Assembly: GCA_965637545.1 (NCBI GenBank) | Contig: OZ281501.1 | Location: 11,470,001-11,534,000, forward strand | Reading direction: 5' to 3' | DNA: 64,000 nt | From: Phallusia mammillata | Lineage: Eukaryota | Shown here: positions 2,984 through 48,080 of the stretch, one piece after another | Position numbering within the stretch: the stretch's first letter is position 1 | How the letters are laid out: each line of letters opens with the position of its first letter | Made by a program: the position numbers and the translations under genes | Notes under the pieces: model-generated | What the model was told of the DNA's origin: nothing | Seen by the model: the letters and a program-made list of their open reading frames with translations, nothing else | Databases searched by the model: none

Positions 2984-3321
2984 GTAAGTGTGTACTAGTA
3001 TAAAGTTACCTCTAGTCATCTTGCATAGTAGTAAGAGTAAGTCATTGAATAGCCTCTGTGTTAAGCACCATTGTTTGGTTCTGCTTGACTGATTTATAAA
3101 TGCCGCAACCTTTATGTTTGCCTTTTTCTCTCATAGCTGTGTATACAAGGCTGGCCCACTTCCTGGGTTTTCTTGATTTGGAAGGATGTGTTGTTAACTT
3201 CTCAGGCTGTTATCAACAGATTTATTTGCTCCTTTGCAGGAAGAGCTTTGCTTCACAACTTGATTTGAAACCTTGCAGTCTAAATCTTAACGAATTGAGT
3301 TTACCAGAGGTTCATCACGCA

Positions 3322-6300: not shown

Positions 6301-8630
6301 CAAATTTACATTATTTGGAACAGCAAATAACAACAATTAGACTTCAGCATTTATGGGTCTGGTACTTTAGTGTTGACATTTGTAGCTTTTTGTAACAAAT
6401 AAAAATTAAAGTACATTGGAAGTCCTTTGCACTCATCAGTTGTGTTTCATTTAGATTGCTCCTGAGACCGCTGTGAAATTTATGGCGTATGAAAAAATGA
6501 AATATTTGATTGGTGCTCAGTCACAATCAGAAATTGGTGCTCCACAAAAGTTCATTGCAGGGTCAACTGCAGGAGTCATTTCGCAAACCACAATCTACCC
6601 TATGGAGGTGATGTTGGCAGTCTTTGGTTGTATGAGTGTTTTTTACAGCCAGATTTTAACCTTAAAATCATTTATTTGGACCCAAATAGAAACATGGGAC
6701 CAGTTAAATGGAGATATGCGACCGGTGCAATTTACATCTACTGTTTGGACTAACCATACTTTACTTACATGGGCATCACCTTAATTGTGGGCAATGACCA
6801 CACTTATGGCCAGACAGTAAACTTTTCTCTTTTTATGAAGGTCATAAAGACTCGACTCGCCTTGCGTAAAACTGGCCAATACAAGGGTATTTTTGACTGT
6901 GCTGTGAAAGTCTTTCGACATGAAGGGCCAGGAGCTTTTTTTAAAGGTTATATTCCTAATTGTCTTGGAATCATACCATATGCTGGTATTGATCTATGCA
7001 TTTATGAGGTAATATGAATTTTGTTGCGGCCTACCTGTGTAAATGAGGTTTACTGGTTTCCTGTATAACCTGCTGGATAAATAAAAACTGGATTACTTAT
7101 GGTCAACATTAAATTGTTTTAGATTTTACATTTTTTTTTCGACATTTGTGAAGTCACAATTAAATATACAAGTTCTCATTTTGCAGACATTAAAAAATTT
7201 TTGGATAAAAAACTACAGTGCAGAGAAAGACAGACCATCTGTACCTCTGTTGCTTGCTTGTGGTACAATTTCTAGTACATGCGGACAACTTTCTAGTTAT
7301 CCTCTTGCCCTGGTCAGAACGAAGATGCAAGCCCAAGGTAAATAATACAATAAATTATTACATGTCAGAAGAAAATTCAGTGTGAAAAACCACTAAATCT
7401 GTCGCTATGTTTTATTTGTTTTATCAAAACAAATGCATTTCGCTATAAAAAGCATCATCAGTGTCTAAAAACAAAATAAAAAGCGGGATAAGAGCAAAAA
7501 ATGCAAAAAACACACACCACCAGACCAACCGCAAAAAGCCTTTCCTCTGTCTTACAGGACTGCAAATGCAGACCGGCAGGTATGGCGTTGATAAAACACA
7601 CGAAAAAAGGCGAGGAAAAGATAAGGGCGCAAAACGAAAAAACAAACACGATTGCAACAACAAAGCGATTGCAGTTAACGAACTGCCGGAAGGACCATCG
7701 CTTGAACATTTATTGTGGCGCCGGTTAAAATTAGCCATTTGTTTTCACAAATATCCAATTTTTCTGTCCGCGGTTCCTCCACAAAAACCACATTATAACA
7801 GAGCGCAATATCCAACTTTTTTTGAAAAAGTTGGAAATGTTTATTGTGGTAGTGCTGAAGAAGGGCCGCGCGGTCACCCCCTACACTTAAGTCGGACGTC
7901 CGCCAAACAAACCGATGTGAATTCCATCGGGTCGAAAACTTCCTCGCCTTTTTTCGTGTGTTTTATCAACGCCATACCTGCCGGTCTGCATTTGCAGTCC
8001 TGAAAGACAGAGGAAAGGCTTTTTGCGGTTGGTCTGGTGGTGTGTGTTTTTTGCATTTTTTGCTCTTATCCCGCTTTTTATTTTGTTTTTAGACACTGAT
8101 GATGCTTTTTATAGCGAAATGCATTTGTTTTGATAAAACAAATAAAACATAGCGACAGATTTAGTGGTTTTTCACACTGAATTTTCTTCATCTGATTTTA
8201 ATGACCCTGAATCGTCGCGGTCGTTTTACTTGAAAGGAGATTTCAATAATAAGAAAAGAATTACTACGTTATTACATGTCATTCATTTTCTCGCGAAATG
8301 TTAACATGTATGTTTTTAGCATCACTGCCAGATTCTAAACATGAGAAAGTTAGTATGGTTTCATTGTTCCGTTCCATTGTGCAAAACGAGGGAGTGTTCG
8401 GGCTCTACAGAGGATTGGCACCAAACTTCATGAAGGTATTTTTTACACCACACAGCGAAAATACTATTGTAACTTGCTGGAAGTCACAAATTGCTTGAAA
8501 TAATTATTGAAACTAGATTTCATGGTTTTTACAGCTTAACAACTGTTTTGTGTTTCAGGTGGTACCAGCAGTGAGTATTAGTTATGTGGTTTATGAAAAC
8601 ATGCGAATGCAACTTGGTGTGTACAGATGA
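3322..8630 (+). CDS. SCaMC: Calcium-binding mitochondrial ATP-Mg/Pi carrier (SCaMC; SLC25A23/24/25 family), 11 exons, 473 aa
   Basis: Exons 3322-3486, 3871-3997, 4068-4155, 4694-4805, 5567-5725, 6058-6168, 6455-6607, 6841-7008, 7187-7337, 8320-8435, 8559-8630 give 1422 nt with consistent phases. Four EF-hands ([36 protein letters not shown]) and three carrier repeats (PLDRLK, PMEVIK, PLALVR). AATAAA at 9168. Confidence 0.95.
7368..8189. mobile_element. Foldback-type element with 250-bp near-perfect inverted arms in SCaMC intron 9
   Basis: 7368-7617 is the reverse complement of 7940-8189 (one mismatch seen). The 322-bp spacer has an internal 11-bp hairpin at 7811-7835. No clear TSD and no credible coding capacity. 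Confidence 0.8.
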
Positions 8631-27473: not shown

Positions 27474-28157
27474 ATGTCAACCGACGGAGACACCCAGCAT
27501 GCTGTTGCGATCAAACTTCCGACTTTCTGGTCAGCAGAACCACGTGTTTGGTTCCAACAAATTGAGGCACAATTTGCATTAAAACACATAGTTGCAGACC
27601 AAACAAAGTTTTATTATGTAGTGTCCGCACTTGATCAAGATACAGCAAAGCGTATAATCGATTTATTGGAAGATCCTCCAGCAGAAAACAAGTTCGCATC
27701 AATTAAACAAAGACTGCTGGATTATTTTGATTTATCAAATCAAGAAAGAGCAGCACGCCTGCTGAACATTGCACCTCTCGGTGACAGAAAACCTTCTGAA
27801 CTTATGGACGAAATGCTAGCCCTAATGGGAAAACACCAGTCTTGCTTTCTATTCCAACATTTGTTTTTACAACATATGCCGGAAGATATTCGTATTGTCC
27901 TCGTTCAAAAAGATTTGGAAAACCCTCGCGATTTGGCAAAACAGGCGGATAGGTTATGGCTTGCTCGGACGAGCAACACAGACTACACCATTGCCAAATT
28001 AAGAAAGCAGAGGCAAGCTAAATCTACAACACTTTTCAACAGCAACGACAGTAGTCAATATTGTTTTTACCACCGGCGTTTCAAACAAGATGCACGACAA
28101 TGTCGTCCACCATGTGCTGCACAACAGGGAAACGCCAAGGCCGGTTGTCCACAATGA
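27474..28157 (+). CDS. gag: Gypsy Gag, 227 aa, with CHCC-type motif
   Basis: [22 protein letters not shown]-terminus; C-x2-H-x9-C-x3-C ([18 protein letters not shown]). Confidence 0.93.
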
Positions 28158-31100
28158 ATGGGACAACCGGCAAATCACACAACTTATTTTTCGTGTGGGA
28201 TCGAGCCTCTGGTTGCAACTTTCTCGTGGACACTGGTGCTGAAATCAGTGTCTTTCCGCCTTCTGGCTATGAAAGGAGAATGAACCACAAGGGACAAAAT
28301 CTCACAGCAGCTAACGGCAGCAATATAACAACCTACGGTTCCAAGTTAATTTCTCTTGATATTCCTTCCGGCGAGTTTCAATGGAAGTTTGTGCTCGCCG
28401 ACGTATCAAGGCCACTACTTGGAGCAGATTTCCTTCGAGCGCACGGTTTACTTGTTGATGTTAAACGGCAATGTCTGGTGCATGCTCAGTCGTTAACTAG
28501 CATGACCATAGGCAAGACAAACCGAGCGGCACCTCGCCTAAACGCAATTAGCAACGCACAATCAAGTTATGCCAAACTTTTGGCAAAGTTTCCGGACATA
28601 ACAACGCCACATTTTTCTGCAGTAATGCCAAAACATGGTGTGGAACATCACATTCCCACAAGCGGCCTACCAGTGCACTCTCGGGCAAGACGACTTCCAC
28701 CCGAAAAACTAGCCATTGCAAAGGCAGAATTTAGTAAAATGATGGAGCTGGGAATAGTCCGCCGTTCATCCAGTCCATGGTCGTCTCCACTTCATATGGT
28801 TCCCAAAACATCAGGTGGATGGCGCCCCTGTGGCGATTACAGGCGCCTTAATGCAGCAACACAACCAGACCGTTACTCGATCCCACATATCCAGGATTTT
28901 ACAACACGACTGGCAGGGGCTAAGATTTTTTCTAAAATCGATCTGGTTCGAGGATATCACCAGGTACCCGTTGCGCCAGCAGACATTTCCAAAACGGCTG
29001 TCGTAACACCGTTTGGGCTTTTTGAGTTTCTGCGTATGCCCTTTGGACTTAAAAATGCAGCTCAAGCGTTTCAAAGAATGATGGATACAGTTTGTCAGTC
29101 TTTAAAATTTGTGTTTGTTTACCTTGATGACATATTGGTTGCAAGTAAGTCGGCTAACGAACATCGCAATCATCTTCAGCAGCTTTTTAAACAATTAGCT
29201 GACCATGAACTTGTCATTAATCTGGCCAAATGTAAGTTTGGATTGACGGAAATCGATTTTCTCGGCCATCGCGTGGATAGATTTGGTGCCAGACCCTTAC
29301 CTGACAAAGTCAAGGCAATTCAAAGCTTTCCCAAACCTACCACTATTAAAGGCCTACAAGAATTTGCTGGCATGATAAATTTTTATCACAGATTTCTTCC
29401 TGGTGCAGCGCAAATCATGATGCCATTGTATGAAGCACTTTCGGGCAAACCAAAACACCTGGTTTGGAACAACACAATGCTTGCAGCATTTACCAAGGCT
29501 AAAAAGGCACTTGCTGCAGCAACGCTACTTCACCACCCTATACCTCAGGCACAAACCGCCCTGACGGTCGACGCGTCACAGTCAGCTGTTGGTGCTGTGC
29601 TTGAGCAAAACATTGGAGGTTGCTGGAGGCCATTAGCATTTTTCAGCAGGCATCTCAGACCATCAGAAACAAAGTACAGCGCGTTCGACAGAGAGTTACT
29701 GGCTTTGCATTTGGCAATCCGCCATTTTCGATACTTTCTTGAAGGGCGCAGTTTTGCTGCTTTTACTGACCACAAACCGTTAACGTTTGCGTTTGCAAAA
29801 GTGTCTGATCCATGGTCAGCGCGCCAACAACGCCACCTTACAGCAATATCCGAATTCACCACTGATGTTCGACACATCCAAGGGAAACATAATCAAGTAG
29901 CTGACGCATTGTCCCGGATAACTGTCTCAAGTCTACAAAAGGTGATGTTGGATTTCGATTACAAAGCTATAGCGAATGCGCAACTTCATAAAGAAGTGCA
30001 ATCATATCGTACAGCAGTTACAAACCTAAAGCTTGAGGACATAACTATTGGCAACTCTGGTTTAACACTGTTGTGTGACACTTCCACTGGCACTCCGCGA
30101 CCGATCATACCGCTTTCGCGGCAAAAGAAAGTATTCGACATTATTCACTGTTTGTCACATCCGTCAATACGCACGACGCGCAAGCTAATAGCTTCAAAAT
30201 TTGTGTGGCACGGGCTCAAACAGCAAGTAGGATTATGGGTTAAACAGTGTACAGCTTGCCAGAAATCAAAGATCCACACACACGTTCGATCAACTCTGGT
30301 GGATTACTCATTACCTCGTTCCCGTTTTGAACATGTTAACATTGACATTGTTGGCCCTTTACCACCGTCACAGGGCAAAACATATCTGCTGACAATAGTA
30401 GATAGGTTTACAAGGTGGCCAGAAGCAGTTCCCATGGCGGATTCCTTAACTCTAACTTGTGCCAGAGCTTTCCTTTCGGTCTGGATTTCACGGTTTGGAA
30501 TTCCAGCGCACCTATCTTCTGATCGTGGTCCGCAGTTCACGTCCCAGTTATGGTCAACGATAAGCCAACTGCTTGGAATACAACTTCATCTCACCACCAG
30601 CTTTCACCCTCAATCAAACGGATTAGTTGAACGATTTCATCGGCACTTAAAGAGTGCTTTGATGGCTCGCCTTTCTGGACCAAACTGGATTGACGAATTA
30701 CCTTGGGTTATGTTAGGCATTCGAACTGCCCCCAAGGATGATTTACAGACATCTTCAGCAGAGCTCGTATATGGCTCTCCAATCGCAGTGCCAGGAGATT
30801 TCATCTGTCGTGATGAATCAGCTCCCTCACAAATTTTACCTGCTCTACGGGATGCAGTCGACAAACTTCTACCAACTCCTATGTCCAGACACGGCAATGT
30901 CAAAACAGCAATACCACCAAGTCTGGCGGCTAGTGACTATGTGTTCATTCGGAGAGACACACATCGTCCACCACTGACAAAGCCATATGACGGACCATTT
31001 AAAGTGGTAGCGCGATCCAACAAAACTTTTACATTAAACATGGGAGGTAAAGAGAAGGTGGTATCGATTGACCGCCTTAAACCTGCACATCTTGACCTGA

Positions 31101-31159
31101 GTCAGCCAGTTGTTGTTGAGCAACCTCCTCGCCGCGGCAGACCACCCAAAAAAACATAG
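28061..31159 (+). CDS. pol: Gypsy Pol (protease-RT-RNase H-integrase) in the -1 frame relative to gag
   Basis: FLVDTGA protease; YLDD RT; TVDAS...DRELLA RNase H; HHCC zinc finger; D,D35E integrase (IDIVG, SDRG, NGLVERF); PYDGPF module; C-terminal RRGRPP. Confidence 0.96.
28127..28171 (+). promoter_or_regulatory. Programmed -1 ribosomal frameshift signal
   Basis: Slippery heptamer G GGA AAC (28127-28133) in the gag frame, 6-nt spacer, then an 11-bp perfect stem 28140-28150 / 28161-28171 whose 10-nt loop holds the gag stop. Confidence 0.88.
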
Positions 31160-31472: not shown

Positions 31473-33134
31473 TTGGCTCCCACAGCCACCACTGCAAATG
31501 AAGGTCAAGAGCCTTTCGCTTTCGACCGAAATGTCGAGGTGGAAGCCCGCTTTAACCCTGGCCTGAAAAGACAGGAGATTTACGAAGTTTTACGGGCTAT
31601 CAGGTTCAATTTTCGAGCCGACTTGGACGGCATCATTCAACTGCCGAAGGGCCGAGTTACTTTTTATTGTAGCACGGAGGCGAAGGCCAAAGATCTAGCG
31701 GTCGCCCTGACCAACAGCCAAAGGGCGGATTACGCCACAGCCTACGCTGACAATCTAGTGAAGGTTGTCATGTCTCGCTGTCCCCCAGGGATTGATATGC
31801 GAGAAATCGTGGATTATTTGGACAGAACGTACGCTCCAGTCGAGCGTTCTTACAGAGTTAAAGACCCGATGAGCAAGTCTCTGGGGAAACGGGCTTTCTT
31901 TATGAAGAGATCCGTTCTCGCGGAAAACCCCATCCCAGAAAGCATCTTTCTAGGAAAGTGGTCAGTGTTAATGTTCTACACTGGCCAACCACGGGCTTGT
32001 GCCTATTGTCAGATCGTAGGCCATAAGAAGGAGGAATGCCCGTCGCTGCTGGAGCGTCAGGCACAGCAAACCCAAGAACAGCCTGATGTTCCAGCTGAAG
32101 CACCGGAGGAGATCGGAACAACATCCCCTCCCCAGACCTCGCGACAGGTGCTCCCTGGTCAGGTTGAGCGAGTCGGTGGTCTAGCCACGGAAACGGAGGA
32201 GATCGCAACAACATCCCCTCCCCAGACCTCGCGACAGGTGCTCCCTGGTCAGGTTGAGCGAGTCGGTGGTCTAGCCACGGAAACGGAGGAGATCGCAACA
32301 ACATCCCCTCCCCAGACCTCGCGACAGGTGCTCCCTGATCAGGTCGAGCGAGTCGGAGGTCAGAAGAAGGATACGGAGGAGATCGCAACAACATCCCCTC
32401 CCCAGACCTCGCGACAGGTGCTCCCTGATCAGGTCGAGCGAGTCGGAGGTCAGAAGAAGGATACGGAGGAGATCGCAACAACATCCCCTCCCCAGACCTC
32501 GCGACAGGTGCTCCCTGATCAGGTCGAGCGAGTCGGTGGTCAGAAGAAGAACAAGAAGGAGGAGGAGACAACAACGTCAGCCCCTTCATCGACCTCGCGA
32601 CAGGTGCTCCCTGAAAAGGTTGAGCGAGTCGGTGGTCCAACTACCAACCCCAGGAATCCGCGGTCGAAGCTCCCAAATATGGTTGAGCAAGCCGGTTCTC
32701 CTGGGCCCGCGCCAAGTGCGCCCACGACCTCAACACCCAGGATTACCCAAGGAAATGAGGAAGGGGTCGTCTCCCTTCCGGACACATCGCTTCCAGAGGA
32801 GATCATCACCCCACAGGAGGAAGGATACAAGATCGTCCGGAGGAGGAAACGACCAGCAGCGACACCGCCGAAGAACCGGACAAATTGCTGCCTTACAGCA
32901 TACGAAGGTAGAAACATGCGTTGTTTGTGCGGCACAATGCACATTAAGTGCAAATGTGGCACTTACGCCACAGAACAGAACTATAAAAGCCCATCGCAGT
33001 GTACTAATAAAAAGTGTAAAAGACTGCTAATACAATGCACTTGCGGAAATTGTTATAATTTAGCGGTCGATGAACGAATTCTCTGCTCATGCAAAGCTCG
33101 CATACCGTCAGATTTTAACGCCACCTTTTTTTAA
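31473..33134 (+). CDS. LINE ORF1 protein (zinc knuckle, 30-aa tandem repeats, Cys-rich C-terminus); begins with TTG
   Basis: 553-codon ORF with CAYCQIVGHKKEEC (CCHC), repeats at 32105-32640, and 13 Cys in the last ~80 aa. No in-frame ATG at its start. Confidence 0.8.
   Translation: MAPTATTANEGQEPFAFDRNVEVEARFNPGLKRQEIYEVLRAIRFNFRADLDGIIQLPKGRVTFYCSTEAKAKDLAVALTNSQRADYATAYADNLVKVVMSRCPPGIDMREIVDYLDRTYAPVERSYRVKDPMSKSLGKRAFFMKRSVLAENPIPESIFLGKWSVLMFYTGQPRACAYCQIVGHKKEECPSLLERQAQQTQEQPDVPAEAPEEIGTTSPPQTSRQVLPGQVERVGGLATETEEIATTSPPQTSRQVLPGQVERVGGLATETEEIATTSPPQTSRQVLPDQVERVGGQKKDTEEIATTSPPQTSRQVLPDQVERVGGQKKDTEEIATTSPPQTSRQVLPDQVERVGGQKKNKKEEETTTSAPSSTSRQVLPEKVERVGGPTTNPRNPRSKLPNMVEQAGSPGPAPSAPTTSTPRITQGNEEGVVSLPDTSLPEEIITPQEEGYKIVRRRKRPAATPPKNRTNCCLTAYEGRNMRCLCGTMHIKCKCGTYATEQNYKSPSQCTNKKCKRLLIQCTCGNCYNLAVDERILCSCKARIPSDFNATFF
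32105..32640 (+). repeat. 90-bp (30-aa) coding tandem repeat, 5 full copies plus 1 diverged
   Basis: Units start at 32105, 32195, 32285, 32375, 32465; unit EEIATTSPPQTSRQVLP(G/D)QVERVGG(LATET/QKKDT). Confidence 0.95.
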
Positions 33135-33180
33135 AAAAACTGTGTTACCTTATTGTTCCCCTTTTCATTCAAACGTTAAA

Positions 33181-36100
33181 ATGGCGCCGACCAGTTTTCT
33201 AAAAATCTGTACGCTGAATGTAAACGGCATAGGCCAGGCCTCCAAACGCCACGCCCTGTTCCGTCATCTGTCCTCTTTAAACTTTGACCTTTTTTGCCTC
33301 CAAGAAACCCACTCTACCCCCCAAACCGAATCCCTGTGGAAGTCCGAATGGACTTCCGGCCCAATCCTCTTAAACTCGGCACCGCACAAAGGCTCCGCCA
33401 GCGGCGGTGTCGCAGTTCTTCTAAACTCCTCTAGTATTTCCATTCTAAATTCTATTTCTGACTCCACCGGTCGTATTATTACGACCGACATATCTACCCG
33501 AACCCACACCATCCATATCGTAAACATTTATGCACCCTCCGGCAGTAAAAATCATCAAGCCCGCAACACCTTTTTCGACTCACTATACCCTTACATTAAT
33601 TCACCCCACCCTATCATCCTAACCGGCGACTTCAACTGTGTAGAAAACCCCTCTCTTGACAGATATCCCCCCAGCCATACCCACCCTCCTAATAAAACAC
33701 TACAGAACCTTCTAACAACCTTTCACCTCCAGGACTCTTTTCGGTTACTCCACCCCACCCTACGCCAATTCACCCGTCGAGCACCTAACACCCAATCCCG
33801 AATCGACCGCATTTACATATCTCCAGCCCTCATCCCAAAACAACACACCTTCCTCCCAACATCCCTTTCAGACCACGACCTTGTAATCCTTACCCTGAAC
33901 CTAGTCTCTGCCCCACCCAGGGGCAGAGGCACTTGGAAAAACAACGTCAACACCCTTCACGATCCTCACTTCCAAAAACACCTCCGACAACTTTACCCCG
34001 TATGGAAAACCCTTGCCCCATTCCACCCCAATCCCTTGGACTTCTGGTTGACCCTTAAAGTAAAATTCAAAAAACTTATCCAAACCCACTCAAAACGAAT
34101 TGCCCAAGAACAGCGTACCCATACCCACAACCTCCAGACCCAACTTAACACCCTTCGGCAAACCCTCAACGACGACCCTTCCTTGAAACACTACAAAACC
34201 TTCCTTGCTGTAAAAAATCCCTCGCAACTCTCCACCTCGACACCGCCCGATCCCATCTAATTAAGCTTCTGACCCCCATTTCAAACACATGGCAGACAAA
34301 ACCCTTTACTCACAACTCCTCCCCTCCAAACGACACCCCCCGATAACCGAACTGGAAAACGACCTTGGACTTCCCCTAACCACACCCAAGGAAATGCTTT
34401 CCCATACTCACCGTTTTTTCACAGACCTCTACTCGGACCAAAACAAACCTATCCCACCCCCGGACAATATCTTTTTGAAACAACCACTCAACCCCATACC
34501 GGAAGACCAAACCCAATCCCTATCCCAACCATTATCGAAAAGCGAAATAAAAAATACCATATCCCTTTTCCCAAACGGCAAAACCCCGGGTCCCGACGGT
34601 CTCAGTATCGAGTTTACTCGCTCTACTGGGACCTAATCGGGGCTGACCTCACCCAAGCCCTGGACTACGCGTACCTCAACGCCTATACCCCTTTAGATTT
34701 CAACCTTGGACACCTCACCCTAATCCACAAGAAGAACAACCCATCCCTCCTCACAAACTACCGCCCCATATCCCTCCTGAACGCCGACCTAAAAATACTA
34801 CAAAAAACCCTAAACCTCCGCATCAAACCCTTCCTTTCCCAGATAATTTCCCAAAACCAATTTGCACAACCCAATTCGACCACCTCCGACGCCACAACCC
34901 TCCTCCGCGACCTATTTCATGAAGCCACATCCCGTTCCTCTGATTCCTTTTTTGTTTCGCTCGACTTCCAAAAAGCCTTTGACTCCATTTCCTACACCTG
35001 GTTAAAATTACAACTTACCCGAAAACGTTTTCCCCCTACCTTTGTCAATTACATTCTTTCTCTGCAGACCACCGCTTACTCACACACCCTCCTCAATGGT
35101 TTTGCCACAACGGGCTTCCCGATCAGGAGAGGTGTCCGGCAAGGCGACCCGCTGAGCTTGACCCTCTTCCTGATTGCCATCGACCCATTACTCGCTGCCA
35201 TCCAAAACCACCCTTCGATATCACCTGTCCCAGCCCCTTGTCGAAACACACCAAAAGCAATCGCCTTTGCGGACGACGTCACCCTTGCGGTGGCCGGCTC
35301 CCATTCCCTAGAAACAGCCTTTCAATTAATATCCCGTTTCACCCTGATTACCGGCTTAGCCCTAAACCCCACCAAAACCCAGGCGATTGCTACCCTCTGC
35401 CCCCCAAACTCTCCAAACCTCCCCGATATCAACTGGAACCCGACTGTAATCACCCCTCTCAACATTCCCATCGGCCACCCCAAATCCATCACCGCAGCAT
35501 GGAGAAACGCCATCTGCTCCCTTAAAGAAACCTCCAAGTCCCTCAAACACCCTTTCCTCACCTACGACGCAAAGAGCATTTTAACCAAAACGCTGCTTCT
35601 CCCCAAACTCTCATACCTGGCACGAACCTACCCACTTCCACCCACGCAGCGAGAAACAGTCGATGGCATTGTGGTAGACTTCATTTCAGCCTACCCAAAT
35701 CCTCCCCTTCCAATAAAAACCCTATCCGCACGTCGTGACCTTGGTGGTTACGACGTCGCCAACATTCCCTTATACACAGACATTTTTTTTCTTGCACCCC
35801 TACGGAAATACCTCTTGCACAGAATTTTTGATACCCCGACAACACCCCAGCTTTCCCTACTCGAGTACCACGTTGGACACCCCATCTCCAGACTTTTTAA
35901 CCTCCGCACCAGAAACTACCTTCCCCACTCAAACAAACCTTCCCCCTTTTACCAGACCACTTTGTCGCTACTTGCAAAACTGAACCCAACACAATCCGAA
36001 CTGTTATCCCCAAAATCCAAACCACTCTACACTAGATTAGTCAACCCTGACCCCGACCCCACGAATCCCACCGATTGGTCCCTCATCCACCACCCAACCC

Positions 36101-40029: not shown

Positions 40030-40789
40030 GTAGCTGTTCTTTATAGGCTACAGTCTTTCTAAAAAAACAAACAAAAATACATTGTGTGATATTAAACAGG
40101 TTGCAGACGATGTTCGCGACTTTGCGCAAAATAAATTACAATTCAAAATGTTATCCGTAAAGTTTTTTTAACAAAAATAGTTGGTGCAGACTGCAGACTA
40201 CATGTCACATTATAACAAGAAGCAACAAAACCGGTATCACCACGCGCCAAATTGAAACCAACTACCATGACGGAAACAATCACCTGGCTATAGTTACCGT
40301 AGTCAGGCTGCATTCCTTGGAAAAAAGTGATTACCTAAAATCTCATCGTATGTTTTCTATTGTCGTTGTTTACCTTTCGCTGTATCCACTATTTCTATCT
40401 TTAAAATTCCCCTCGTAAGTTTTCTATTGTCTTTGTTTACTTTACCAAAGAACACTATACACAGCAAAATCCATAGAAAACATTTAACGTCACGCATAAA
40501 TTTTCTTGTCAGCAAGGCAATTTAGAAATAAAAAATATTTAGTCGTTAAGCCAGGTTATTGAAAAAAACATCCAAAACCCTATCCTTTGCGTTGTTAAAA
40601 GCGTGCAAAGTCGCCCCATTTCACGCTCCATGAATTCTCGTGCGACAACTTGTGTTTGATAGATAGACTTTGATACACAGGAAGGCCAACTCATTGTTCT
40701 CGCCACGCATGAATGAGTCTTACCAAAGTTGTCAAGGACGAGCAAACAGTTTTACAGACGACAATACAAAATAACAACTTAACGATAAA

Positions 40790-43700
40790 ATGGGAGTTAC
40801 TCACTGTGCGGTGCCAGGATGCAGTTGGTCGGTTAAATACGCCAAGTTGAACAAAGTAAAATGTCCTACGTTTTTTACTGTACGTCGCCCAGAATTTGCA
40901 AAAACACAAGAAGATCGCGACCACCGGCAATGTCTCACCAACTTCATGCTTTCGATGAGGGACGCTCAATCCGGAGATATCTTTAAACATATGCTCCATA
41001 AAGAAACGTAAGTTTGTGTGTGACTTATTATAAATGTCGCCTTAAATACATTAGGCATTCAATTTTATTTCGCGTTTTGTAGAGCTGCTATTTGTGAGAA
41101 CCATTTTCATAAAGAAGATATAATAGTCACAGGTATGAGACGAGTATCATTGAAATGTGGGTCTAAGCCTTCTCTCAACCTGCCAAAGAAAGTTACACAG
41201 GGGCGGCTCGTGCGAGGGGGCTGCGGAGCTGCAGCACCCCCAGTATTTTTACTTGACATTCCTATTCCAAGTTGTTATACAAAACAATCTTTACATATAG
41301 TTTTTATGTTTGATCAGTGTATACTAAGAATAACTTTTATGGCATTAATCCTCATTTATTAAAATAAAATTAGTAAAAATTTTGTATTATTTAAAAAAAA
41401 ATTAAAAAAAAATCAAAATAATGATAAGTTATCTATGGCGGAGCTGCAGCTCCAGTTTCGTGACGTTTCATGACGTTTTCAGTTGTGCGCATGCGCACTT
41501 GGAAAAGCTACATGCCGGGCGTAATAGGCGAGAGGGGGCTGTGGCTCGCGCAGCCCCTCCCGTGACGTAGCGCTAGTTGTGTGGTCTGCTTCGCGTCAGT
41601 GAGCTCCAAAGCCAAACCCGTGTACTGTGTTTTTAAGTTCGACAGTGAGTGCAGTTAAATAATTATTTTGCTATCATTAAATTTATTGTTTGACTGTTAG
41701 TCGTGACTTTTTAAGATGACTGCAAGTGAGTTTCAGTTTTTACAGTTATCATTGAATTAAAAAAGTGTATCTAACACCTTGAAACAGAAAAAAGGTCATC
41801 TAACACCTTTAAAAGTCACAATTAAGCTTTATAATAAATAACTGAATTAAAAAGATTTGTGAAAGTATGGGACAAAACATCTGCTACTCCAATGTCATGC
41901 AGGAATAAGCAACAACAAGAAATACTCAGTTTTAGTTCCTATAATGCTACCAAAGAAAAATTAAATTTGTGACTGTGAAGTTAAATGCCTCACTGAAATT
42001 CAGGAAATATCAAATGCAGAACAAACAACTGCAAGCAACAGGAATTTTGAAATGAAGACAAAAAAAGAGTGAAGACAATTTAAAGTGTGGATTTCTTAAC
42101 ACACCATGTGGACAGTATTTGCAATCAAGTGCAATCATGTGTATTGATATAATGGACATGTACTGTTTGTCTAACCAGTAGCTGCTAAATTGCTTCACAG
42201 GAAGTGTTTCTTAAGAATGAACATTCTACAGACAAGATAGTAGTGACACCAAGCACATACTATTGTTGACAAAGAAAAGCTAGTTACTCAAATGAAAATG
42301 TTTCTGTAGATCTGATGTTTATGATTACTTTGAAAATAATTAATCTAGAGATGATGTTTTGACAAATTAAATTACTAGGATGAAAAATTCTTTTTTGCTC
42401 TTTCCATGATTTCTTCAAAGGCAAAACAGTTCTTTATAACACTGAAAAAGATGCCAATTTTTCTGAGGAACACCAATATTTCCAAAAGACTTGCACTTGC
42501 AGTGCTAGCTCTAAATAGAAAAAAGTTTCTTAATTGTCATTTGGAAATCAAGGAAAAAGCTATCAATTATCATGCCCAAACTATAACTTCATAATTCATT
42601 TTGGTTGGAAAAAGGAAGCACAAGATTTAAAAATATGGTTTAAATTTAAGTGAGAGTGTTGTAAATTTTAAAGCTTGAAGGCGTTTTGCACTTTTTATAA
42701 TAAGTGTTTTATAAGCTATTTGCCAGCAAGCAGCAATTATAGCAGTTAAGAAACTAAAATACAATTAATAGTCTGTACACAAAAATTCAAGAAAGATGTT
42801 TAAATGAACAAGTTCTGAAACCAATGTAATGTGGTTGTTAAATTTGTTAGTTATGATACCAATAAAAAGCTGTATGGCTAGTTTTTTTGTGTGACAATAA
42901 TCTGTGAAGTGTCATAGAATATGTTGAAAACGCTGACTGTGACTAAATTTACTTAAATGAAACATGACAATTTTTGTTGTCGAACTTCGACCTTTTTCGA
43001 CTCATTTATATCTATTTTTTCTATATTCCTGTTGTGTTTTACCGTATTTACAACCGCTTCGTTTCGAAGCTGTGCCACGTGTGTTTTTGTTTTTCACATT
43101 ATTACTGAACGTTATTGTGTTTGGCCCGTCGCTGTGCAAGTAAACAAAATACACAAATGATGCCGTCTGCTGTTTACAGTCGTGTACATTATTGCGTAAC
43201 AAAAATTACGTCACAATGGAGTTGCTAGTTAAGATTTGTATTACTTGTTTTTCTACACAAAACAAATGGCTAGAAAACTAGAAACGTAGCTTTTCAATAT
43301 ATTGCCAACTTATATATGTTCAGTAAAGGCTAAAATTTGTGGGGGCAGCACCCCCACAAATTTTAGGCACGAGCCGCCACTGAAGTTACACCTGGTGTAA
43401 AGGCAAGGAAAGCTCCAACAAAATTAGCACCTGCAAAGAAAATTTACCATGCAACCATTACCCAAATTATGCAGTCTGCTACAAAACTTGGAAATGCAAT
43501 GAAAGGTTACAAATGTTGTAATTCCCACTTTCTGGTGTATTTATTGATTCTAATACATGCAGATAATTGGATATTTTATCAGCAAAAAAATAGCTGTGTG
43601 TGTGAAATGAAGGAAGAAAATTACTTGGTTCCAAAATTAAGGTAATTATTAGTAATATAGTTTTCTGCAACTGAAATTTAAACCCATTGGAACTATTATT

Positions 43701-46638
43701 ATTCACGTTTTAGAGTGGTTATAGATGAAACCGTAAAGGTTTCTAGAATATCTTTGTATGGCTGGGATTACATTAATGGCAGTGGAGACAATATAGAAGA
43801 TCCAAAGTTTTCAACTTTACACTGCTTTTTAAGTGAGCAAATATTGTTAGTCTACTTTGTATAACTAAAAGACATGCAACTGGGCTCGAATTTTCAGAAA
43901 GTGTGGAAGCTTTGTCTTTGTGCAGAGGAGTAAGTCCAATTGATGACCAAATTTTAAATACCCATCCAACATTAAAATGGAATGGGACAAATATAATATC
44001 AGAGCACATTTACAGGACCAACAAGTGCAGAATAGTTGGTAAATATACAGTGTACTTAACAACGAGTTTACATGGCATTTAACAATTCCATATTGTTATG
44101 TCAGCAAGTGGTGGAGATGTAGTCTGTGCAGACTGTAAAAAGTACAACCAACAGGCAGGTGAGGACATGACACCAAATGACGAGGTAATTTGTAGAACAT
44201 AGCTGCAGTGCATTCAGCCATTATCCACCAGTTGTGCCACCCACTGTTTTGCACTATATAATGTTCATAGGTTGGACAGCAATTACTGGTTTGATGATCA
44301 TTTTACTACAATTCTGTGGCAGTTTTTTCACCAAGTTAAATAAACTCAACTTGATGAAATTGTTTTGTATTCTGCATGTGTTGCTTAAAATCCATGTGAA
44401 GTTCTTCAAATATTGTTGTTCAATACACATAAAATACAAATTATTGCAATGTTGAATATTGAAAATTTTGCAGCTTGAAAATGAGTCGAGATCTTTAAAT
44501 GAGTGGCAACAGTTGTTTTTGAAGCAACAAATCCGAAATTCTTATGTGCCTCCCAATGCTAGGAGATATCACCCTGATATGATAAGATGGTGCATTGAAT
44601 TGCATTGCCGTTCTCCTGCGGCCTATGAACATATAAAAAATAGCAATGTTTTGGTTTTACCTTCATCAGCTACAATAAAAAGTTACAGGTAAAAGTTAAT
44701 ACAAGACAGAATAACAAAATATGGATAGTAACATATTTGTATTTTCTCTTATCTTTAGAAATCAGATTTCCCATCAGCCAGGTTTAAATACACAAGCTAT
44801 TAAACAAGTAAAGAATGTTATGCAGCAATATAAAACCCTTCCAGGATACATAACAATGGATGAAATGAAAAGTAAGTGCAAAATTTTGTTCAATTGTGTC
44901 TGATGCCATTACTAATCAAATATGTTTGAAAAGTACGTGAAAACTTGGTGGTGCATGAAGGCAAGTTGATAGGATTTGTTGATTGGGGTGAACCAGATGC
45001 AACCAAATTAGCCTCACATATTCTTGGTAAGTTTAAATATTTGTAATTTAAATGTGTATGTCATAAACATAATATTGGACTTAACAAGTCTTTTTTTTGG
45101 TTAGTGTTTTATGTCCGAACTGTGAAAAGAGAAATTTCTTTGCCAATCGCTTGGTTTCCCACCCATGCCACACCAGCAAATGAATTGGCACTTATGTTTT
45201 GGCAAGTGCTGTTTGAATTGGAAAAGATCGGTATTGAAATTCATGCACTTGTGGCGGATGGAAATTCCACCAACCGAAAATGTTTTCTCTTGCTGAGTGG
45301 CCTAAAAAGTGTTCCACTGGACAAACCATTTGTTGCACCAAACCCATTTTCACAAAGTCGACAAATATTTATGTGTTCAGACCCCTCACATTTACTAAAA
45401 GTAAGTTGCTATTTGGTTTGTAGTAAAGATAAAAAAAACTAACATAACTTTTTTTGTTTTCAGACTGCACGGAATTCATTATTTTCATCAAAGCCTGGTG
45501 GTGCTCGCTACATGAACATGGGCACAGGGGAAGGTGACATTCTGTGGACTCATATTGTAACGTTATATGAGGAGGAACAAAAAAGCTCCATATTAAGCAG
45601 AACACGATTGACCAGAGCACACGTCAAATTAAATCCCTTCAGTAAAGTACAGTGTACTTTTAAACATTGTGTTGCATTTAAACAAATCTAACATATGTCA
45701 AGAATAGATGTACATGTACATTATGTACATATAAATGTAATGTAACCTAAGAGTTTATAAACGTGAATACTCTTACCAATTTATGGGCTCTGGTTGATTT
45801 TTAAACTTTCTACAGATGAAAGTGGGTCTTGCAAGGGAAATGCTAAGCTGGAAAGTGCTTGGAGACCATTAAGGGAGCATCAGGCACTTCACAGTTTGTT
45901 CTTCTTTTTGCAGAGTATGTTTCAGATGTTCACTCTTCTGAAGCAAAAGAAGATCATGTATAATTCATCTTTATGTTTCTTTTGCTTAGATGGTTTGACA
46001 TAATGAATTGCACCATCAAGTGTCCAATTCAATCTGTTGATGATCCAAGACTTGTCTTTCTGCAAACGTTTGTTAAAAAACTTATGACATGGAAGGTATG
46101 ATATTTACATACAGTGTTGCAGTCATTGAATGTTCACTTTTCAGAATTTGTTTCTGGTTCATTTTTTTAGAATCGTGTGGAACAAAACCACAAAGGAGAG
46201 GACAAGCGATTGCTTGCTGCACCAACCCTGGTGGGGTTGGTGTTCACAACAAATAATTTTATAGAATTATGTAGGCAACTTTTGCATAGACATGACATAT
46301 CATATGTCTGTCTACATACTTTCACCCAGGACAACTTGGAAGCATTTTTTGGCAACCTGGTATGTGCCCAGTCTAAATTTATGCACGACTTTCACTTCCC
46401 AAACCTGTACAAGCACTATATTATTATTAATGAAATGTTTTTATTATTATAGCGACAGCTTGGACGAAGGTCACAAAACCCAGATATCTTTCAGGCATCA
46501 TTTGGAATACAGCACATCACACAAAGAAAAATAATTAAACACGTAAAAGGTGGGAACACAACTTTTGGCAAAAAGAATGCATGGACCACAGTGTCAGAAG
46601 AGCCAATTGAAAAAAAGAAGCGTGCATCTTTCTTGTAA
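40790..46638 (+). pseudogene. Multi-exon P-element/THAP9-like transposase, disrupted by a hAT insertion and frameshifts
   Basis: THAP exons 40790-41007 and 41083 onward (CAVPGC...ICENHF...KPSLNLP); HTH exon 44474-44688 (RRYHPDMIRW..SPAAY..LPS); catalytic MDEMK (44759-44871), VADG and DPSHLLK (45105-45400), QDNLEAFFG (46171-46359); last exon 46453-46638. Frameshifts near 43850 and within 45816-45914. Confidence 0.9.
41198..43382 (+). mobile_element. Deleted hAT element (2185 bp) inserted in the THAP exon of the P transposase
   Basis: TIR CAG(G/T)GGCGGCTCGTGC; 8-bp TSD AAGTTACA (41190-41197, 43383-43390). Remnant ORF 42406-42594 (FFITLKKMPIFLRNT...RLALAVL) resembles the hAT C-terminal dimerisation region. 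Confidence 0.92.
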
Positions 46639-46850
46639 CTAAAAAAATCGTTAATACATTACAACAAGTTAAGAAATGGTACCATAGCACTGTCTGATGT
46701 GTGTGTGTGAAAATATTGCTATGTTGCTACATGTTCATAGCAGAAGAGTAGAAATACAAATAAAATACAATAAAAAACAACAACAGGAACCTGCAAAACA
46801 GAAACATCAACAAAATCAAATTACATAAATAACACATTATACATGTATGT

Positions 46851-47741
46851 TTATTTCCTTTTTAAATCACCTCTGAGACCCTTAGATCGATCATTTGATC
46901 CAACATATAGTTTTTCAAACAACTTTTTTGCGAATGCATGCAACAAAACTCTAACAAAAAGTTTCACAATATATTGCAACATACAACAGACACTTGCAGG
47001 TTCCTCATCAGACATGTCCTGAATTAAACTTTGAAAATTCATAAATTTTACATCACATATTATTTCCTCTGTAGCACTGTTAAAGTTAATGGCAGTTGGC
47101 TTTCCATTAGTCTGTCTTGTTATTTTTAAGTAAACATGTTGTAAAAAGAGAAGAAGTTCATCCGAAGGATATTTCAAACAGCCAGTAAATGTTTCCATTG
47201 TTTTGATTAGACTGCCATGTGGTTCTGACGCACAAATACACCCTATGGCTTCAGACAAGGCTGGGAATTTTGCCAATGTTTTCCGAATTAAAAACCCTCC
47301 AATATATTCAATGGTGTCGTTTTCAAATGCCTTTATTTGTCCATATGCGCACATTGTGACTGGTTCTTTGGTTTGATGAACAATTTTTGTGATGATATTT
47401 AAAAGACATTCTGCCGCAGAACCGTTGCTAAGATCAACATCAGAAAAATACTGTTTGGCGTTGAGGCACATTAAAGGAAACTTGCTTACAATTTCATCCT
47501 TGTTGTTGGTTTGTGCAAATGTTTTAAGCAAACTACCCACCAACTCCAAACCTGCGTTCGACAACTTCAATTTTAGATTCATTTCTGCAATGAATTGAGC
47601 TGGAAATGTAGATGTCTCAGTGCTCGATACACTTTGCTGTACAGAAAAGCCGGCGTCAGCTAGAACATCAATTTCACTGTCCATATTTTCGAACAATAGG
47701 TCCCTTATAACTTCCTCGGGTAAATTTAAGATTTCTTCCAT
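46851..47741 (-). CDS. Intronless 296-aa antisense ORF of the P element, resembling the P/THAP9 transposase C-terminal domain
   Basis: Intact ATG-to-stop ORF starting ~150 bp inside the right TIR. Motifs EYIGGFLIRK, GSLI...GCLKYPS, IVKLFVRVLLH and a basic terminus. The homology call is from recalled family patterns. Confidence 0.8.
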   Translation of the reverse strand: MEEILNLPEEVIRDLLFENMDSEIDVLADAGFSVQQSVSSTETSTFPAQFIAEMNLKLKLSNAGLELVGSLLKTFAQTNNKDEIVSKFPLMCLNAKQYFSDVDLSNGSAAECLLNIITKIVHQTKEPVTMCAYGQIKAFENDTIEYIGGFLIRKTLAKFPALSEAIGCICASEPHGSLIKTMETFTGCLKYPSDELLLFLQHVYLKITRQTNGKPTAINFNSATEEIICDVKFMNFQSLIQDMSDEEPASVCCMLQYIVKLFVRVLLHAFAKKLFEKLYVGSNDRSKGLRGDLKRK

Positions 47742-48080
47742 TCTTATCGATGTCTATGACCCAAATGTTTATCAAAAAGTGTAGTCTTTGCTACCTACTC
47801 CAGCCATTTTCCCGCTTTCTATCCAGCCTTGGTCAAGCGTGACGAATTGAAACGTCACAATGAGTTAGCCTTCCTCTGTATAGTGTTCTTTGACTTTACG
47901 CCGTAGCCACTATTTCTATCCTTAAATTTCCCCTCGTATGTTTTCTATTGTCTTTGTTTACTTTACGCCGCTACTACTATTTCTAACTTTAAAATTCCCT
48001 TTTTCTTTATTTTTATATCGTCTTTGTTTACTTCTTTGCTGTGTGTACGACTTCCATGTATCTGACCTTTCCTCGTATCC

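What the first reader, a model, noticed from the sequence alone, without database searches (positions are those of the whole stretch)
46453..47741. Split P transposase: the C-terminal domain appears to be a separate, convergent, intact gene
Seen: the plus-strand transposase stops ~65 aa after the catalytic QDNLEAFFG (46638). A 296-aa intronless ORF on the opposite strand (47741-46851) lies inside the same TIRs and is undamaged. Its second half reads EYIGGFLIRK...GSLI...GCLKYPSDELL...IVKLFVRVLLHAFAKK...LRGDLK. Known (from recall): P/THAP9 transposases continue past the catalytic core with a domain patterned Y.[AG]GY...K...SL....GL..PS..L...I...F...R. Inference: the element encodes a two-subunit transposase, with the C-terminal domain fused to a new ~135-aa acidic N-terminus and separately regulated, or a CTD-derived repressor or cofactor. 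This would be a two-gene P-element system I do not recall being described.
Basis: partly seen in the sequence, partly recalled or inferred. Interest (0 to 1): 0.8.

Follow-up and report, generated by a model that had tools for sequence, protein, structure and literature searches.

The report
P transposon with separate CTD gene
A P-type jumping gene here splits its transposase between two genes that face each other: a catalytic protein that stops just after the cutting domain, and a separate 296-residue protein carrying the missing C-terminal domain. The same layout recurs in Ciona, Hydra and a coral, so it is a conserved design, and I found no description of it.

Summary

- **Element:** window 40673-47892 is a P-superfamily transposon with ~36-bp terminal inverted repeats (TIRs).
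- **ORF1 (+ strand):** a spliced THAP–HTH–RNaseH/GBD gene that ends at 46638, about 65 aa after the catalytic QDNLEAFFG. RNA contigs confirm its last intron and show no later splice.
- **ORF2 (47741-46851, − strand):** intact and intronless. Residues 134-281 match the Drosophila P transposase C-terminal domain (CTD):
  - structure: Z 11.0, 2.4 Å over 114 of 118 residues, next best Z 6.9;
  - sequence profile against a fused THAP9-like transposase: 97.6%, E 4e-12.
- **Not a one-off inversion:**
  - all 19 co-located ORF1/ORF2 pairs in this genome are convergent;
  - the same layout occurs in Ciona intestinalis, Hydra vulgaris, Stylophora and metagenomic contigs, one with an intronless 947-aa CTD-less transposase;
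  - 133 representative ORF2 relatives are almost all stand-alone proteins of about 300 aa.
- **Selection:** ORF2 is under purifying selection (dN/dS 0.19).
- **Binding:** a complex model supports ORF1-ORF2 binding (0.65 against 0.00 for the controls).
- **This copy:** ORF1 is broken and only ORF2 is intact.

Whether ORF2 is an essential subunit or a regulator is untested. I found no paper describing this layout. The scan flagged the same idea elsewhere in this genome (s1-364014).

The parts
40673..40708 (.). Left TIR of the P-type element, truncated in this copy (lacks the outer 11 nt, CAAAGAACACT, that the chromosome-3 copy has)
40790..41008 (+). ORF1 first coding exon (start Met, C-x2-C half of the THAP zinc finger); exon end approximate
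   Evidence: 70% aa identity to the Ciona copy; no Pfam hit on its own
41024..41197 (+). ORF1 second coding piece (C-x2-H half of THAP); exon start approximate; cut by the nested insertion
   Evidence: weak PF05485 THAP, E 0.026
41198..43382 (.). Nested hAT-like non-autonomous element (16-bp TIR CAG(G/T)GGCGGCTCGTGC; 8-bp target duplication AAGTTACA at 41190-41197 and 43383-43390); absent from the two sister copies; disrupts ORF1
   Evidence: very high contig depth at its end
43391..43642 (+). ORF1 linker/coiled-coil coding region (approximate)
44456..44689 (+). ORF1 HTH exon (PF12017 Tnp_P_element, 23.4 bits against a cut-off of 23)
44748..45043 (+). Two small ORF1 exons (about 44748-44873 and 44933-45043), conserved in Ciona and the other families
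45104..45400 (+). ORF1 RNase H N-terminal exon (PF21787, 33.4 bits); exon end fixed by the RNA joint 45400/45464
45464..45688 (+). ORF1 GTP-binding insertion domain exon (weak PF21788); exon start fixed by the RNA joint
45776..45914 (+). ORF1 GBD exon carrying a private 8-nt deletion at 45848 (frameshift) relative to both sister copies and all RNA contigs; exon end fixed by the RNA joint 45914/45990
45990..46098 (+). ORF1 exon (end of the insertion domain)
46171..46359 (+). ORF1 RNase H C-terminal exon with the catalytic-Glu motif QDNLEAFFG
   Evidence: equivalent motif of relative L035 aligns to Drosophila TNP residues 512-561
46360..46452 (+). Last ORF1 intron (93 nt, GT..AG), confirmed in spliced contigs of three runs
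46453..46638 (+). ORF1 terminal exon (61 codons plus TAA); the protein ends about 65 aa after the catalytic Glu, with no CTD
   Evidence: 86% aa identity to Ciona
46639..46850 (.). 212-nt AT-rich spacer between the two stop codons; holds AATAAA-type signals for both genes; covered continuously by an RNA contig
46851..47741 (-). ORF2, intact intronless 296-aa gene (stop at 46851-53)
46854..46898 (-). ORF2 residues 282-296: basic tail (6 K/R in 15, pI 11) with the conserved GLR..LK+K motif
46899..47342 (-). ORF2 residues 134-281: all-helical domain homologous to the P transposase CTD (Drosophila TNP 617-734)
47361..47606 (-). ORF2 residues 46-127: family-specific helical module (pLDDT about 90). 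The equivalent of helix 106-123 is at the predicted interface with the ORF1 RNase H domain in the cnidarian pair.
47607..47741 (-). ORF2 residues 1-45: acidic, mostly disordered N-terminus with a conserved short helix (LPEEVIRDLLFENMD type)
47742..47856 (.). Subterminal region upstream of the ORF2 start; presumed ORF2 promoter (inferred, not shown)
   Evidence: position only; RNA contigs reach the element end
47857..47892 (.). Right TIR, complete (CAAAGAACACTATACAGAGGAAGGCTAACTCATTGT read inward)
   Evidence: near-identical TIR in Ciona

Best explanation
The element is a P-superfamily cut-and-paste transposon from a clade that encodes its transposase as two polypeptides from two convergent genes inside one pair of TIRs.

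Shown:
- ORF1 (spliced, plus strand) carries the THAP finger, HTH, and the RNase H fold split by the GTP-binding insertion. It ends just after the last RNase H helix, about where the Drosophila 66-kDa repressor ends.
- ORF2 (intronless, minus strand, starting about 150 nt inside the right TIR) carries the all-helical C-terminal domain with a basic tail. It is preceded by a family-specific helical module and an acidic N-terminus.
- The layout is conserved, ORF2 is under purifying selection, and both genes are transcribed.

Inferred:
- ORF2 docks on the ORF1 RNase H domain through its N-terminal module.
[quoted passage not shown] Both proteins would therefore be needed for transposition.
- Convergent, possibly overlapping transcription gives the element a way to set the ORF1:ORF2 ratio or to make antisense RNA.

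The window copy itself is dead as an autonomous element. ORF1 carries a hAT insertion and an 8-nt frameshift, and the left TIR is truncated. Its ORF2 is still intact.
For: CTD homology
- PF12596 matches window ORF2 at E 6.8e-4 and 14 of 37 family members.
- The family profile hits 6p5a_B, the P transposase CTD chain, at E 1.3e-3 and 2.9e-4.
- hhalign to the THAP9_C region of fused fragments: P0083 97.6%, E 4e-12; P0117 94.3%.
- AF2 model, pLDDT 83. VIA-align gives 6p5a_B Z 11.0, rmsd 2.4 A, 114 of 118 residues, next best Z 6.9. It is also the Foldseek top hit, prob 0.99.

ORF1 lacks a CTD
- Stop at 46638.
- RNA joints at 45400/45464, 45914/45990 and 46358/46452, and none later.
- The intronless 947-aa relative aligns to TNP up to residue 561 and ends 46 aa later.
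- None of the 120 closest relatives listed (of 408 found) carries PF12596 or PF22824.

Conserved layout
- Three young copies and several families diverged to 30% aa identity in this genome: 19 of 19 co-located pairs are convergent.
- One family on chromosome 5 has 37-bp TIRs bracketing both genes.
- Ciona intestinalis has near-identical TIRs.
- Hydra vulgaris, Stylophora pistillata and metagenomic contigs show the same layout.
- 133 representative ORF2 relatives are nearly all 200-400 aa stand-alone proteins.

Selection
- dN/dS is 0.19 at dS 0.67 between subfamily copies. pN is far below pS in all deeper pairs. At least 5 ORFs are intact.

Binding
- Complex prediction on the cnidarian pair (transposase 400-947 with partner 100-395) scored 0.65, best of 3 controls 0.00.
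- The mark was reached by 51 of 78 solved complexes and 2 of 108 mismatched pairs (microbes). On eukaryotes it was reached by 39 of 65 and 2 of 126.
- The runs agree in at least 47% of contacts. Partner pLDDT is at least 42.

Drosophila background
- The CTD is joined by a disordered linker, contacts donor and target DNA and ends in a basic tail. The CTD-less 66-kDa form is inactive and acts as a repressor (PMC7776569).
Against: - No functional data exist, so a requirement for ORF2 is inferred only.
- The complex test was run on a cnidarian relative, not the window proteins. The partner's own fold was uncertain (pLDDT 42-45). A like complex (6P5A) is solved, so the pass may partly reflect memory.
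- Window ORF2 scores 20.6 bits on PF12596, below Pfam's 22.6-bit cut-off.
- ORF2 evolves faster than ORF1 (about 51% against 70-86% aa identity to Ciona). That would also fit a regulator.
- The RNA evidence is unstranded contigs. They cannot show starts, ends or strand, and the transcribed copies seen carry frameshifts in ORF2.
- In the young subfamily two of three copies share a 7-nt ORF2 frameshift, so copies spread without their own working ORF2. This is compatible with supply in trans.
Confidence: 0.6

Rival explanations
1. ORF2 is an element-encoded regulator, not a subunit: a CTD-derived inhibitor or titrator, functionally like the KP or 66-kDa repressors. ORF1 would be a self-sufficient CTD-less transposase, and ORF2 would bind ORF1 or the DNA ends to damp transposition.
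For: - ORF2 diverges faster than ORF1.
- Cnidarian versions add an N-terminal C2H2 finger, so the protein can be retargeted.
- Convergent transcription suggests regulation.
- P elements are known to encode truncated repressors (PMC7776569).
- A passing binding model fits an inhibitor as well as a subunit.
Against: - In Drosophila, the form without the CTD is catalytically inactive (PMC7776569).
- A dispensable repressor should often be lost from autonomous lineages. Yet every co-located pair found keeps it, across cnidarians and tunicates and under purifying selection.
- The structural match covers essentially the whole CTD, including the basic tail.
Confidence: 0.22
2. The window's ORF2 copy has been co-opted by the host. 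It is the only intact gene in a decayed element and now serves a cellular function.
For: In this copy ORF1 is broken three ways and the left TIR is truncated, while ORF2 is intact. The two sister copies have frameshifted ORF2.
Against: - The copies differ by only about 1.5-1.8%, so an 891-nt ORF surviving by chance is unremarkable.
- The RNA contigs laid here carry the sister copies' deletions, not the window allele.
- No orthologous single-copy locus was shown.
Confidence: 0.05
3. ORF2 is a decaying relic of an old 3' inversion with no function, or ORF1 gains its CTD from undetected exons.
For: An inversion of the last exon is the simplest way to create the layout. Contig-level RNA data cannot exclude rare isoforms.
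Against: - Open frames are kept at 30% aa identity, and dN/dS is 0.19.
- The start-proximal motif and the basic tail are conserved.
- Intronless ORF1 relatives end without a CTD.
- There are no joints after 46452.
- No other CTD-like coding was found.
Confidence: 0.04

Closest known systems
Drosophila melanogaster P element transposase (87-kDa TNP; PDB 6P5A/6PE2) and its 66-kDa repressor
   Same: - Same domain set and order: THAP, HTH, RNase H split by a GTP-binding insertion, and an all-helical CTD with a basic tail.
- TIR-bounded element. The one copy with both ends intact (chromosome 3) shows a 7-bp duplication (up to 9 with boundary ambiguity), in the P-type range.
- ORF1 ends about where the 66-kDa product ends.
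- ORF2 residues 134-281 superpose on TNP 617-734.
- In Drosophila the CTD is already a separable unit. It sits behind a disordered linker and, by my own knowledge of the element, is encoded largely by the exon after the regulated intron IVS3.
   Different: - Here the CTD is on a different polypeptide, encoded on the opposite strand with its own start near the right TIR.
- It carries an extra N-terminal helical module and an acidic head.
- No IVS3-type intron retention is needed to make a CTD-less protein.
Vertebrate THAP9 / zebrafish Pdre2 (P-homologous, fused CTD; Pfam PF22824 THAP9_C)
   Same: Homologous catalytic core and CTD. The ORF2 family profile aligns to the THAP9_C region of fused transposase fragments. 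Some ORF2-type proteins carry precomputed PF22824 hits.
   Different: THAP9-type proteins are single polypeptides. THAP9 is a domesticated single-copy gene without TIRs (PMC7776569).
P transposons of Ciona intestinalis (Kimbacher et al. 2009, Mol Genet Genomics 282:165; not readable here)
   Same: Almost certainly the same element family. The Ciona locus examined has near-identical TIRs, 70-86% identical ORF1 exons and an intact 301-aa ORF2.
   Different: I could not read that paper, so I do not know whether it noted the second gene. Reviews that cite it describe only transposase homology.
Two-gene eukaryotic DNA transposons: PIF/Harbinger (transposase + Myb-like protein), MuDR (mudrA/mudrB, convergent), ProtoRAG (RAG1-like/RAG2-like, tail-to-tail). 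From my own knowledge.
   Same: Works alike in outline: a catalytic DDE protein plus a second element-encoded protein needed for, or modulating, transposition. In MuDR and ProtoRAG the two genes are also convergent inside the TIRs.
   Different: In those systems the second protein is unrelated to the transposase. Here it is a detached domain of the canonical single-chain enzyme.

Membership tests
P superfamily of DNA transposons | Terminal inverted repeats bounding the element | tested here: met
   36-38-bp TIRs define the ends across three copies. The window's left TIR lacks its outer 11 nt. Near-identical TIRs occur in Ciona.
P superfamily of DNA transposons | 7-8-bp target-site duplication | tested here: met
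   The chromosome-3 copy with both ends intact is flanked by GTGATAC (7 bp, up to 9 with boundary ambiguity). Not testable on the window copy because its left end is truncated.
P superfamily of DNA transposons | N-terminal THAP zinc finger | tested here: inconclusive
   The domain is split by an intron. Exon 2 gives PF05485 at E 0.026 and exon 1 gives nothing alone. C-x2-C and C-x2-H are visible in the translation. The intronless relative L035 gives E 0.0014.
P superfamily of DNA transposons | P-type HTH and an RNase H fold interrupted by the GTP-binding insertion domain, with the catalytic Glu motif | tested here: met
   PF12017 23.4 bits (cut-off 23); PF21787 33.4 bits (cut-off 24.6); PF21788 weak at 15.7 bits. 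All exons align to relatives. The relative L035 aligns to 6p5a_A residues 333-561, including the QD..E..FG motif.
P superfamily of DNA transposons | C-terminal domain on the same polypeptide as the catalytic core (canonical P/THAP9 architecture) | tested here: not met
   ORF1 stops at 46638. No RNA joint lies downstream of 46452. The intronless relative ends 46 aa after the RNase H domain. The CTD is on the opposite strand.
P/THAP9 transposase C-terminal domain (PF12596 Tnp_P_element_C; PF22824 THAP9_C) | Match to the Pfam model above its curated cut-off | tested here: inconclusive
   Window ORF2 scores 20.6 bits against a cut-off of 22.6, E 6.8e-4. Family member P0004 scores 26.5 bits. 14 of 37 members match at E <= 0.01.
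P/THAP9 transposase C-terminal domain (PF12596 Tnp_P_element_C; PF22824 THAP9_C) | Profile-level homology to the CTD of bona fide single-chain P-type transposases | tested here: met
   hmmsearch of the family profile against 6p5a_B gives E 2.9e-4. hhalign to the fused fragment P0083 (GBD, RNaseH_C, THAP9_C) gives 97.6%, E 4e-12. hhalign to P0117 gives 94.3%.
P/THAP9 transposase C-terminal domain (PF12596 Tnp_P_element_C; PF22824 THAP9_C) | Same fold as the solved CTD | tested here: met
   VIA-align gives Z 11.0, rmsd 2.4 A, 114 of 118 residues (model 134-281 against TNP 617-734), next best Z 6.9. It is the Foldseek rank-1 hit, prob 0.99, TM 0.64 by target.
P/THAP9 transposase C-terminal domain (PF12596 Tnp_P_element_C; PF22824 THAP9_C) | DNA contacts and requirement for catalysis | not testable with these tools
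   Only a basic C-terminal tail (pI 11) parallels the Drosophila description (PMC7776569).

The most novel reading that the evidence does not exclude
An ancient lineage of P-type transposons works as an obligate heteromeric transposase and predates the cnidarian-bilaterian split. It has a catalytic ORF1 and a detachable ORF2 that carries the CTD and binds DNA. Convergent, overlapping transcription acts as a built-in dosage or antisense control. The single-chain Drosophila P and THAP9 enzymes, including the IVS3-gated CTD exon, would then be the fused counterpart of this modular design, either descended from it or its ancestor.
Probability: 0.35. Interest if true: 0.85.

Novelty: new variant of a known kind. 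Interest (0 to 1): 0.72.

Why it matters
- **A natural domain-separation experiment.** P element transposase is a textbook enzyme, and its CTD is the part whose presence turns a repressor-like protein into an active transposase. A natural, conserved lineage with the CTD on its own gene lets one ask directly what the CTD contributes: assembly, target capture or regulation.
- **A new member of a small class.** It adds the P superfamily to the eukaryotic DNA transposons with two element-encoded proteins.
- **Annotation.** Hundreds of anonymous proteins of about 300 aa in cnidarian, tunicate and metagenomic data are explained as transposon genes. CTD-less 'P transposase' models should not be treated as truncated predictions.
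- **Tool building.** A two-component system would allow separate control of the catalytic and accessory parts.

Tried and rejected
- **Single-sequence PDB searches.** phmmer against PDB with ORF2, the QDNLEAFFG exon and the tail exon found nothing meaningful. Profiles were needed.
- **First structure model.** The first AF2 model, from 6 sequences, was poor (pLDDT 66), and its Foldseek list ranked 6p5a_B only 16th. It was superseded by the 37-sequence model.
- **ESM Atlas.** The feature search gave only sub-threshold bacterial and viral clusters and is uninformative.
- **Spurious PDB hit.** The designed repeat protein 8ugc_A hit the N-terminal half of the profile. It has no significant single stretch and is low-complexity helical sequence.
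- **Short Logan contigs** carrying ORF2-type genes showed no poly(A) tail or other mark that would prove they are separate mRNAs.
- **Literature.** Kimbacher et al. 2009 is not held. Seven full-text searches found no description of a second P-element gene. This is absence within the held library only, and Repbase reports are not covered.
- **Fused relatives.** A search for fused relatives to build a split-versus-fused tree returned only five proteins, so I made no tree and make no claim about which state is ancestral.
- **RNA contigs** cannot give strand, ends or levels, so I make no claim about promoters, poly(A) sites or relative expression.
- **One-off inversion, hidden CTD exons and chance ORF** were all considered and rejected (see the rivals).


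Full report
**What is in the window**

The ORF listing shows a 296-aa ORF at 47741-46851 on the minus strand. It is the fourth-longest ORF in the window. An open frame of that length is expected about 4e-4 times by chance in this AT-rich sequence.

On the plus strand, upstream, lie exon-sized pieces with Pfam hits to the P-transposase HTH (PF12017), RNase H N-terminal part (PF21787) and GTP-binding insertion domain (PF21788). The frame holding QDNLEAFFG runs into a GT..AG intron at 46360-46452. It resumes for 61 codons and stops at 46636-38.

**Limits of the element**

I compared the window with two sister copies, one on the same chromosome and one on chromosome 3.
- The shared sequence runs from 40673 to 47892, with inverted ends of about 36 bp.
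- The chromosome-3 copy has both complete TIRs, starting CAAAGAACACTATACA, and a 7-bp flanking duplication.
- The window copy has lost the outer 11 nt of its left TIR.
- It also carries a nested 2.2-kb hAT-like element at 41198-43382 inside the THAP-proximal coding region. That element has a 16-bp TIR and the 8-bp duplication AAGTTACA.

Both genes therefore lie inside one pair of TIRs. The ORF2 start codon is about 150 nt inside the right end.

**State of the copies**

The three young copies are 98.2-98.6% identical.
- Each ORF1 is damaged differently: the window has the hAT insertion and a private 8-nt deletion at 45848, the chromosome-3 copy a 20-nt deletion, and the other copy an 8-nt insertion in the last exon.
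- ORF2 is intact only in the window.
- The two other copies share a 7-nt deletion at 46977, and one of them has two further deletions.
- Comparison with diverged subfamilies and with Ciona shows that the window frame is the ancestral one.

**Transcription**

Contigs of three small runs carry GT..AG joints at 45400/45464, 45914/45990 and 46358/46452, so these runs are RNA. The predicted last intron of ORF1 is real.
- No joint lies downstream of 46452.
- The ORF2 region is covered without gaps. One contig spans 46843-47892. Another runs from the last ORF1 splice straight through ORF2.
- Contigs give no strand, ends or levels, and the transcribed versions carry the sister copies' frameshifts. This shows that the family is expressed. 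It does not show that the window allele is translated.
- One joint, 44621/45776, has CT..AC ends, which is a GT..AG intron on the minus strand. This hints at a spliced RNA antisense to ORF1.

**Is ORF2 the missing C-terminal domain?**

Four independent lines say yes.
1. **Pfam.** PF12596 matches window ORF2 at E 6.8e-4, 20.6 bits, just under the cut-off. It matches 14 of 37 family members, the best at 26.5 bits.
2. **PDB profile search.** A profile of the family hits chain 6p5a_B, the separately modelled CTD of Drosophila P transposase. The E-value is 1.3e-3 with 6 sequences and 2.9e-4 with 37. The alignment joins the EY(I/L)(A/G)GY..KK and HG.LIK motifs.
3. **Fused transposases.**
   - The profile search of 1.8 billion representatives picked up two fragments of single-chain P-type transposases.
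   - In these the matched stretch follows the GBD and, in P0083, a recognised RNaseH_C motif, and coincides with PF22824 THAP9_C.
   - hhalign gives 97.6% and E 4e-12 for one, and 94.3% for the other.
4. **Structure.**
   - An AF2 model built on the 37-sequence alignment has mean pLDDT 83.
   - Residues 134-281 superpose on TNP 617-734 with Z 11.0 and rmsd 2.4 A over 114 of 118 residues, and the next best chain scores Z 6.9.
   - Foldseek ranks the same chain first, with probability 0.99.

The last 15 residues are basic (pI 11), like the unmodelled basic end of the Drosophila CTD (PMC7776569). Residues 46-127 form a confident helical module with no clear structural relative. Residues 1-45 are acidic and disordered, apart from a short conserved helix.

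**Does ORF1 really lack a CTD?**

In the window family the evidence is the stop codon, the absence of later splices, and the absence of any other CTD-like coding. A PF12596 search of the whole genome returns only ORF2-type sequences.

The cleanest case is a relative on a metagenomic scaffold (L035).
- It is an uninterrupted 947-aa ORF with THAP, HTH, RNaseH_N, GBD and RNaseH_C.
- It aligns to Drosophila TNP through residue 561 of the 569-residue chain A and ends 46 residues later.
- None of the 120 closest relatives listed (of 408 found), including named Hydra, Stylophora and Rhopilema proteins, carries a CTD family.

**Is the layout conserved?**
- **This genome.** It holds at least 75 ORF2-like matches, and at least five are open full-length frames at about 30% identity to the window protein. 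Combining these with the ORF1 matches gives 19 places where both lie within 10 kb. In all 19 the two are convergent, with ORF2 downstream of the ORF1 3' end. Detailed maps of eight loci confirm this, with only 40-200 nt between the stops in the compact ones. A chromosome-5 family has 37-bp TIRs enclosing both genes in 4.6 kb.
- **Ciona intestinalis.** The same family has near-identical TIRs, ORF1 exons 52-86% identical and an intact 301-aa ORF2, 51-55% identical. NCBI's gene model there splices ORF2 into sequence antisense to the transposase.
- **Cnidarians.** Hydra vulgaris and Stylophora pistillata have a CTD-less transposase followed by a convergent gene of about 375 aa. That gene matches the cnidarian ORF2-type protein, which adds a C2H2 finger at its N-terminus.
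- **Databases.** Of 133 representative relatives of ORF2 at E < 1e-3, nearly all are 200-400 aa and match end to end. The family is essentially a stand-alone protein.

**Selection**

Between two subfamily copies that are not saturated (dS 0.67), dN/dS is 0.19. In all deeper comparisons pN (0.27-0.50) is far below pS (0.71-0.80). ORF2 diverges faster than ORF1.

**Binding**

I tested the intronless cnidarian pair, because the window's ORF1 is spliced and broken.
- VERDICT as given by the tool: the model supports binding; it does not show it.
- Score 0.65, best of 3 controls 0.00.
- The mark was reached by 51 of 78 solved complexes and 2 of 108 mismatched pairs. On eukaryotes it was reached by 39 of 65 and 2 of 126.
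- The runs agree in at least 47% of contacts. The partner's pLDDT is at least 42, so its own fold is uncertain.
- A related complex (6P5A) is solved, so memory cannot be excluded.
- The confident contacts join the RNase H N-terminal half of ORF1 to two stretches of the partner. One stretch maps to helix 105-122 of the window ORF2.

**Interpretation**

The best reading is a two-gene P-type transposon in which the CTD is supplied in trans.
- This fits the Drosophila enzyme. [quoted passage not shown] The CTD-less 66-kDa form is inactive and represses (PMC7776569).
- The main rival is that ORF2 is a regulator rather than a required subunit. Persistence of the gene in every lineage examined argues against a dispensable repressor, but does not exclude it.
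- Co-option of the window copy, a functionless relic and hidden CTD exons are all unlikely on the evidence above.

**Novelty**

Reviews and analyses of P/THAP9 that mention Ciona, Hydra or the CTD describe single-chain transposases. Seven searches found no account of a second gene.

The original Ciona paper could not be read, and Repbase is not searchable here, so prior mention cannot be excluded. Another first-stage note in this genome (s1-364014) proposes the same idea for another locus. That agrees with the genome-wide pattern found here but is not independent evidence.

I rate this a new variant of a known kind.

Noticed in passing
window 41198-43382: A 2.2-kb non-autonomous hAT-like element is nested in the P element. 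It has the TIR CAG(G/T)GGCGGCTCGTGC and the 8-bp duplication AAGTTACA. Its right end has extremely high contig depth in a DNA-like run, so it belongs to a high-copy family.
   Followed up: partly
window 44621/45776 (joint in run X2); Ciona locus L032:10001-12952: A contig joint with CT..AC ends implies a minus-strand intron, that is, a spliced RNA antisense to the transposase gene. NCBI's Ciona model (P0001) likewise splices ORF2 into sequence antisense to the transposase and so replaces its last ~50 residues. This may be read-through or antisense regulation.
   Followed up: partly
window 43383 / 47857 (joint on opposite strands, runs X1 and X2): Contigs join the sequence just after the hAT insertion to the inner edge of the right P TIR in inverted orientation, at depth 36-60. 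This is unexplained. It may come from another locus where the two repeats abut.
   Followed up: no
window 28100-31156 (+): An intact 1019-aa ORF with protease, reverse transcriptase, RNase H and integrase domains: an LTR-retrotransposon pol (Ty3/gypsy type) in the GC-rich part of the window. Observed only.
   Followed up: partly
window 33070-34257 (+) and 32104-32637: A 396-aa ORF with an AP-endonuclease domain (non-LTR retrotransposon). Just upstream is a 90-bp tandem repeat of 5.9 copies in a strongly C-skewed stretch.
   Followed up: no
L037 (G000:C5:14673500-14683400), 2808-7384: A separate P-type family, with ORF2 only ~30% identical to the window's. It has 37-bp TIRs plus subterminal inverted repeats, an apparently uninterrupted exon series for ORF1 and an open 286-aa ORF2, all within 4.6 kb.
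   Followed up: partly
L035, L042, L043; proteins P0139, P0066, P0081, P0097: Cnidarian ORF2-type proteins carry an N-terminal C2H2 zinc finger, where tunicate ones have an acidic head. The accessory protein has therefore swapped its N-terminal module between lineages.
   Followed up: partly
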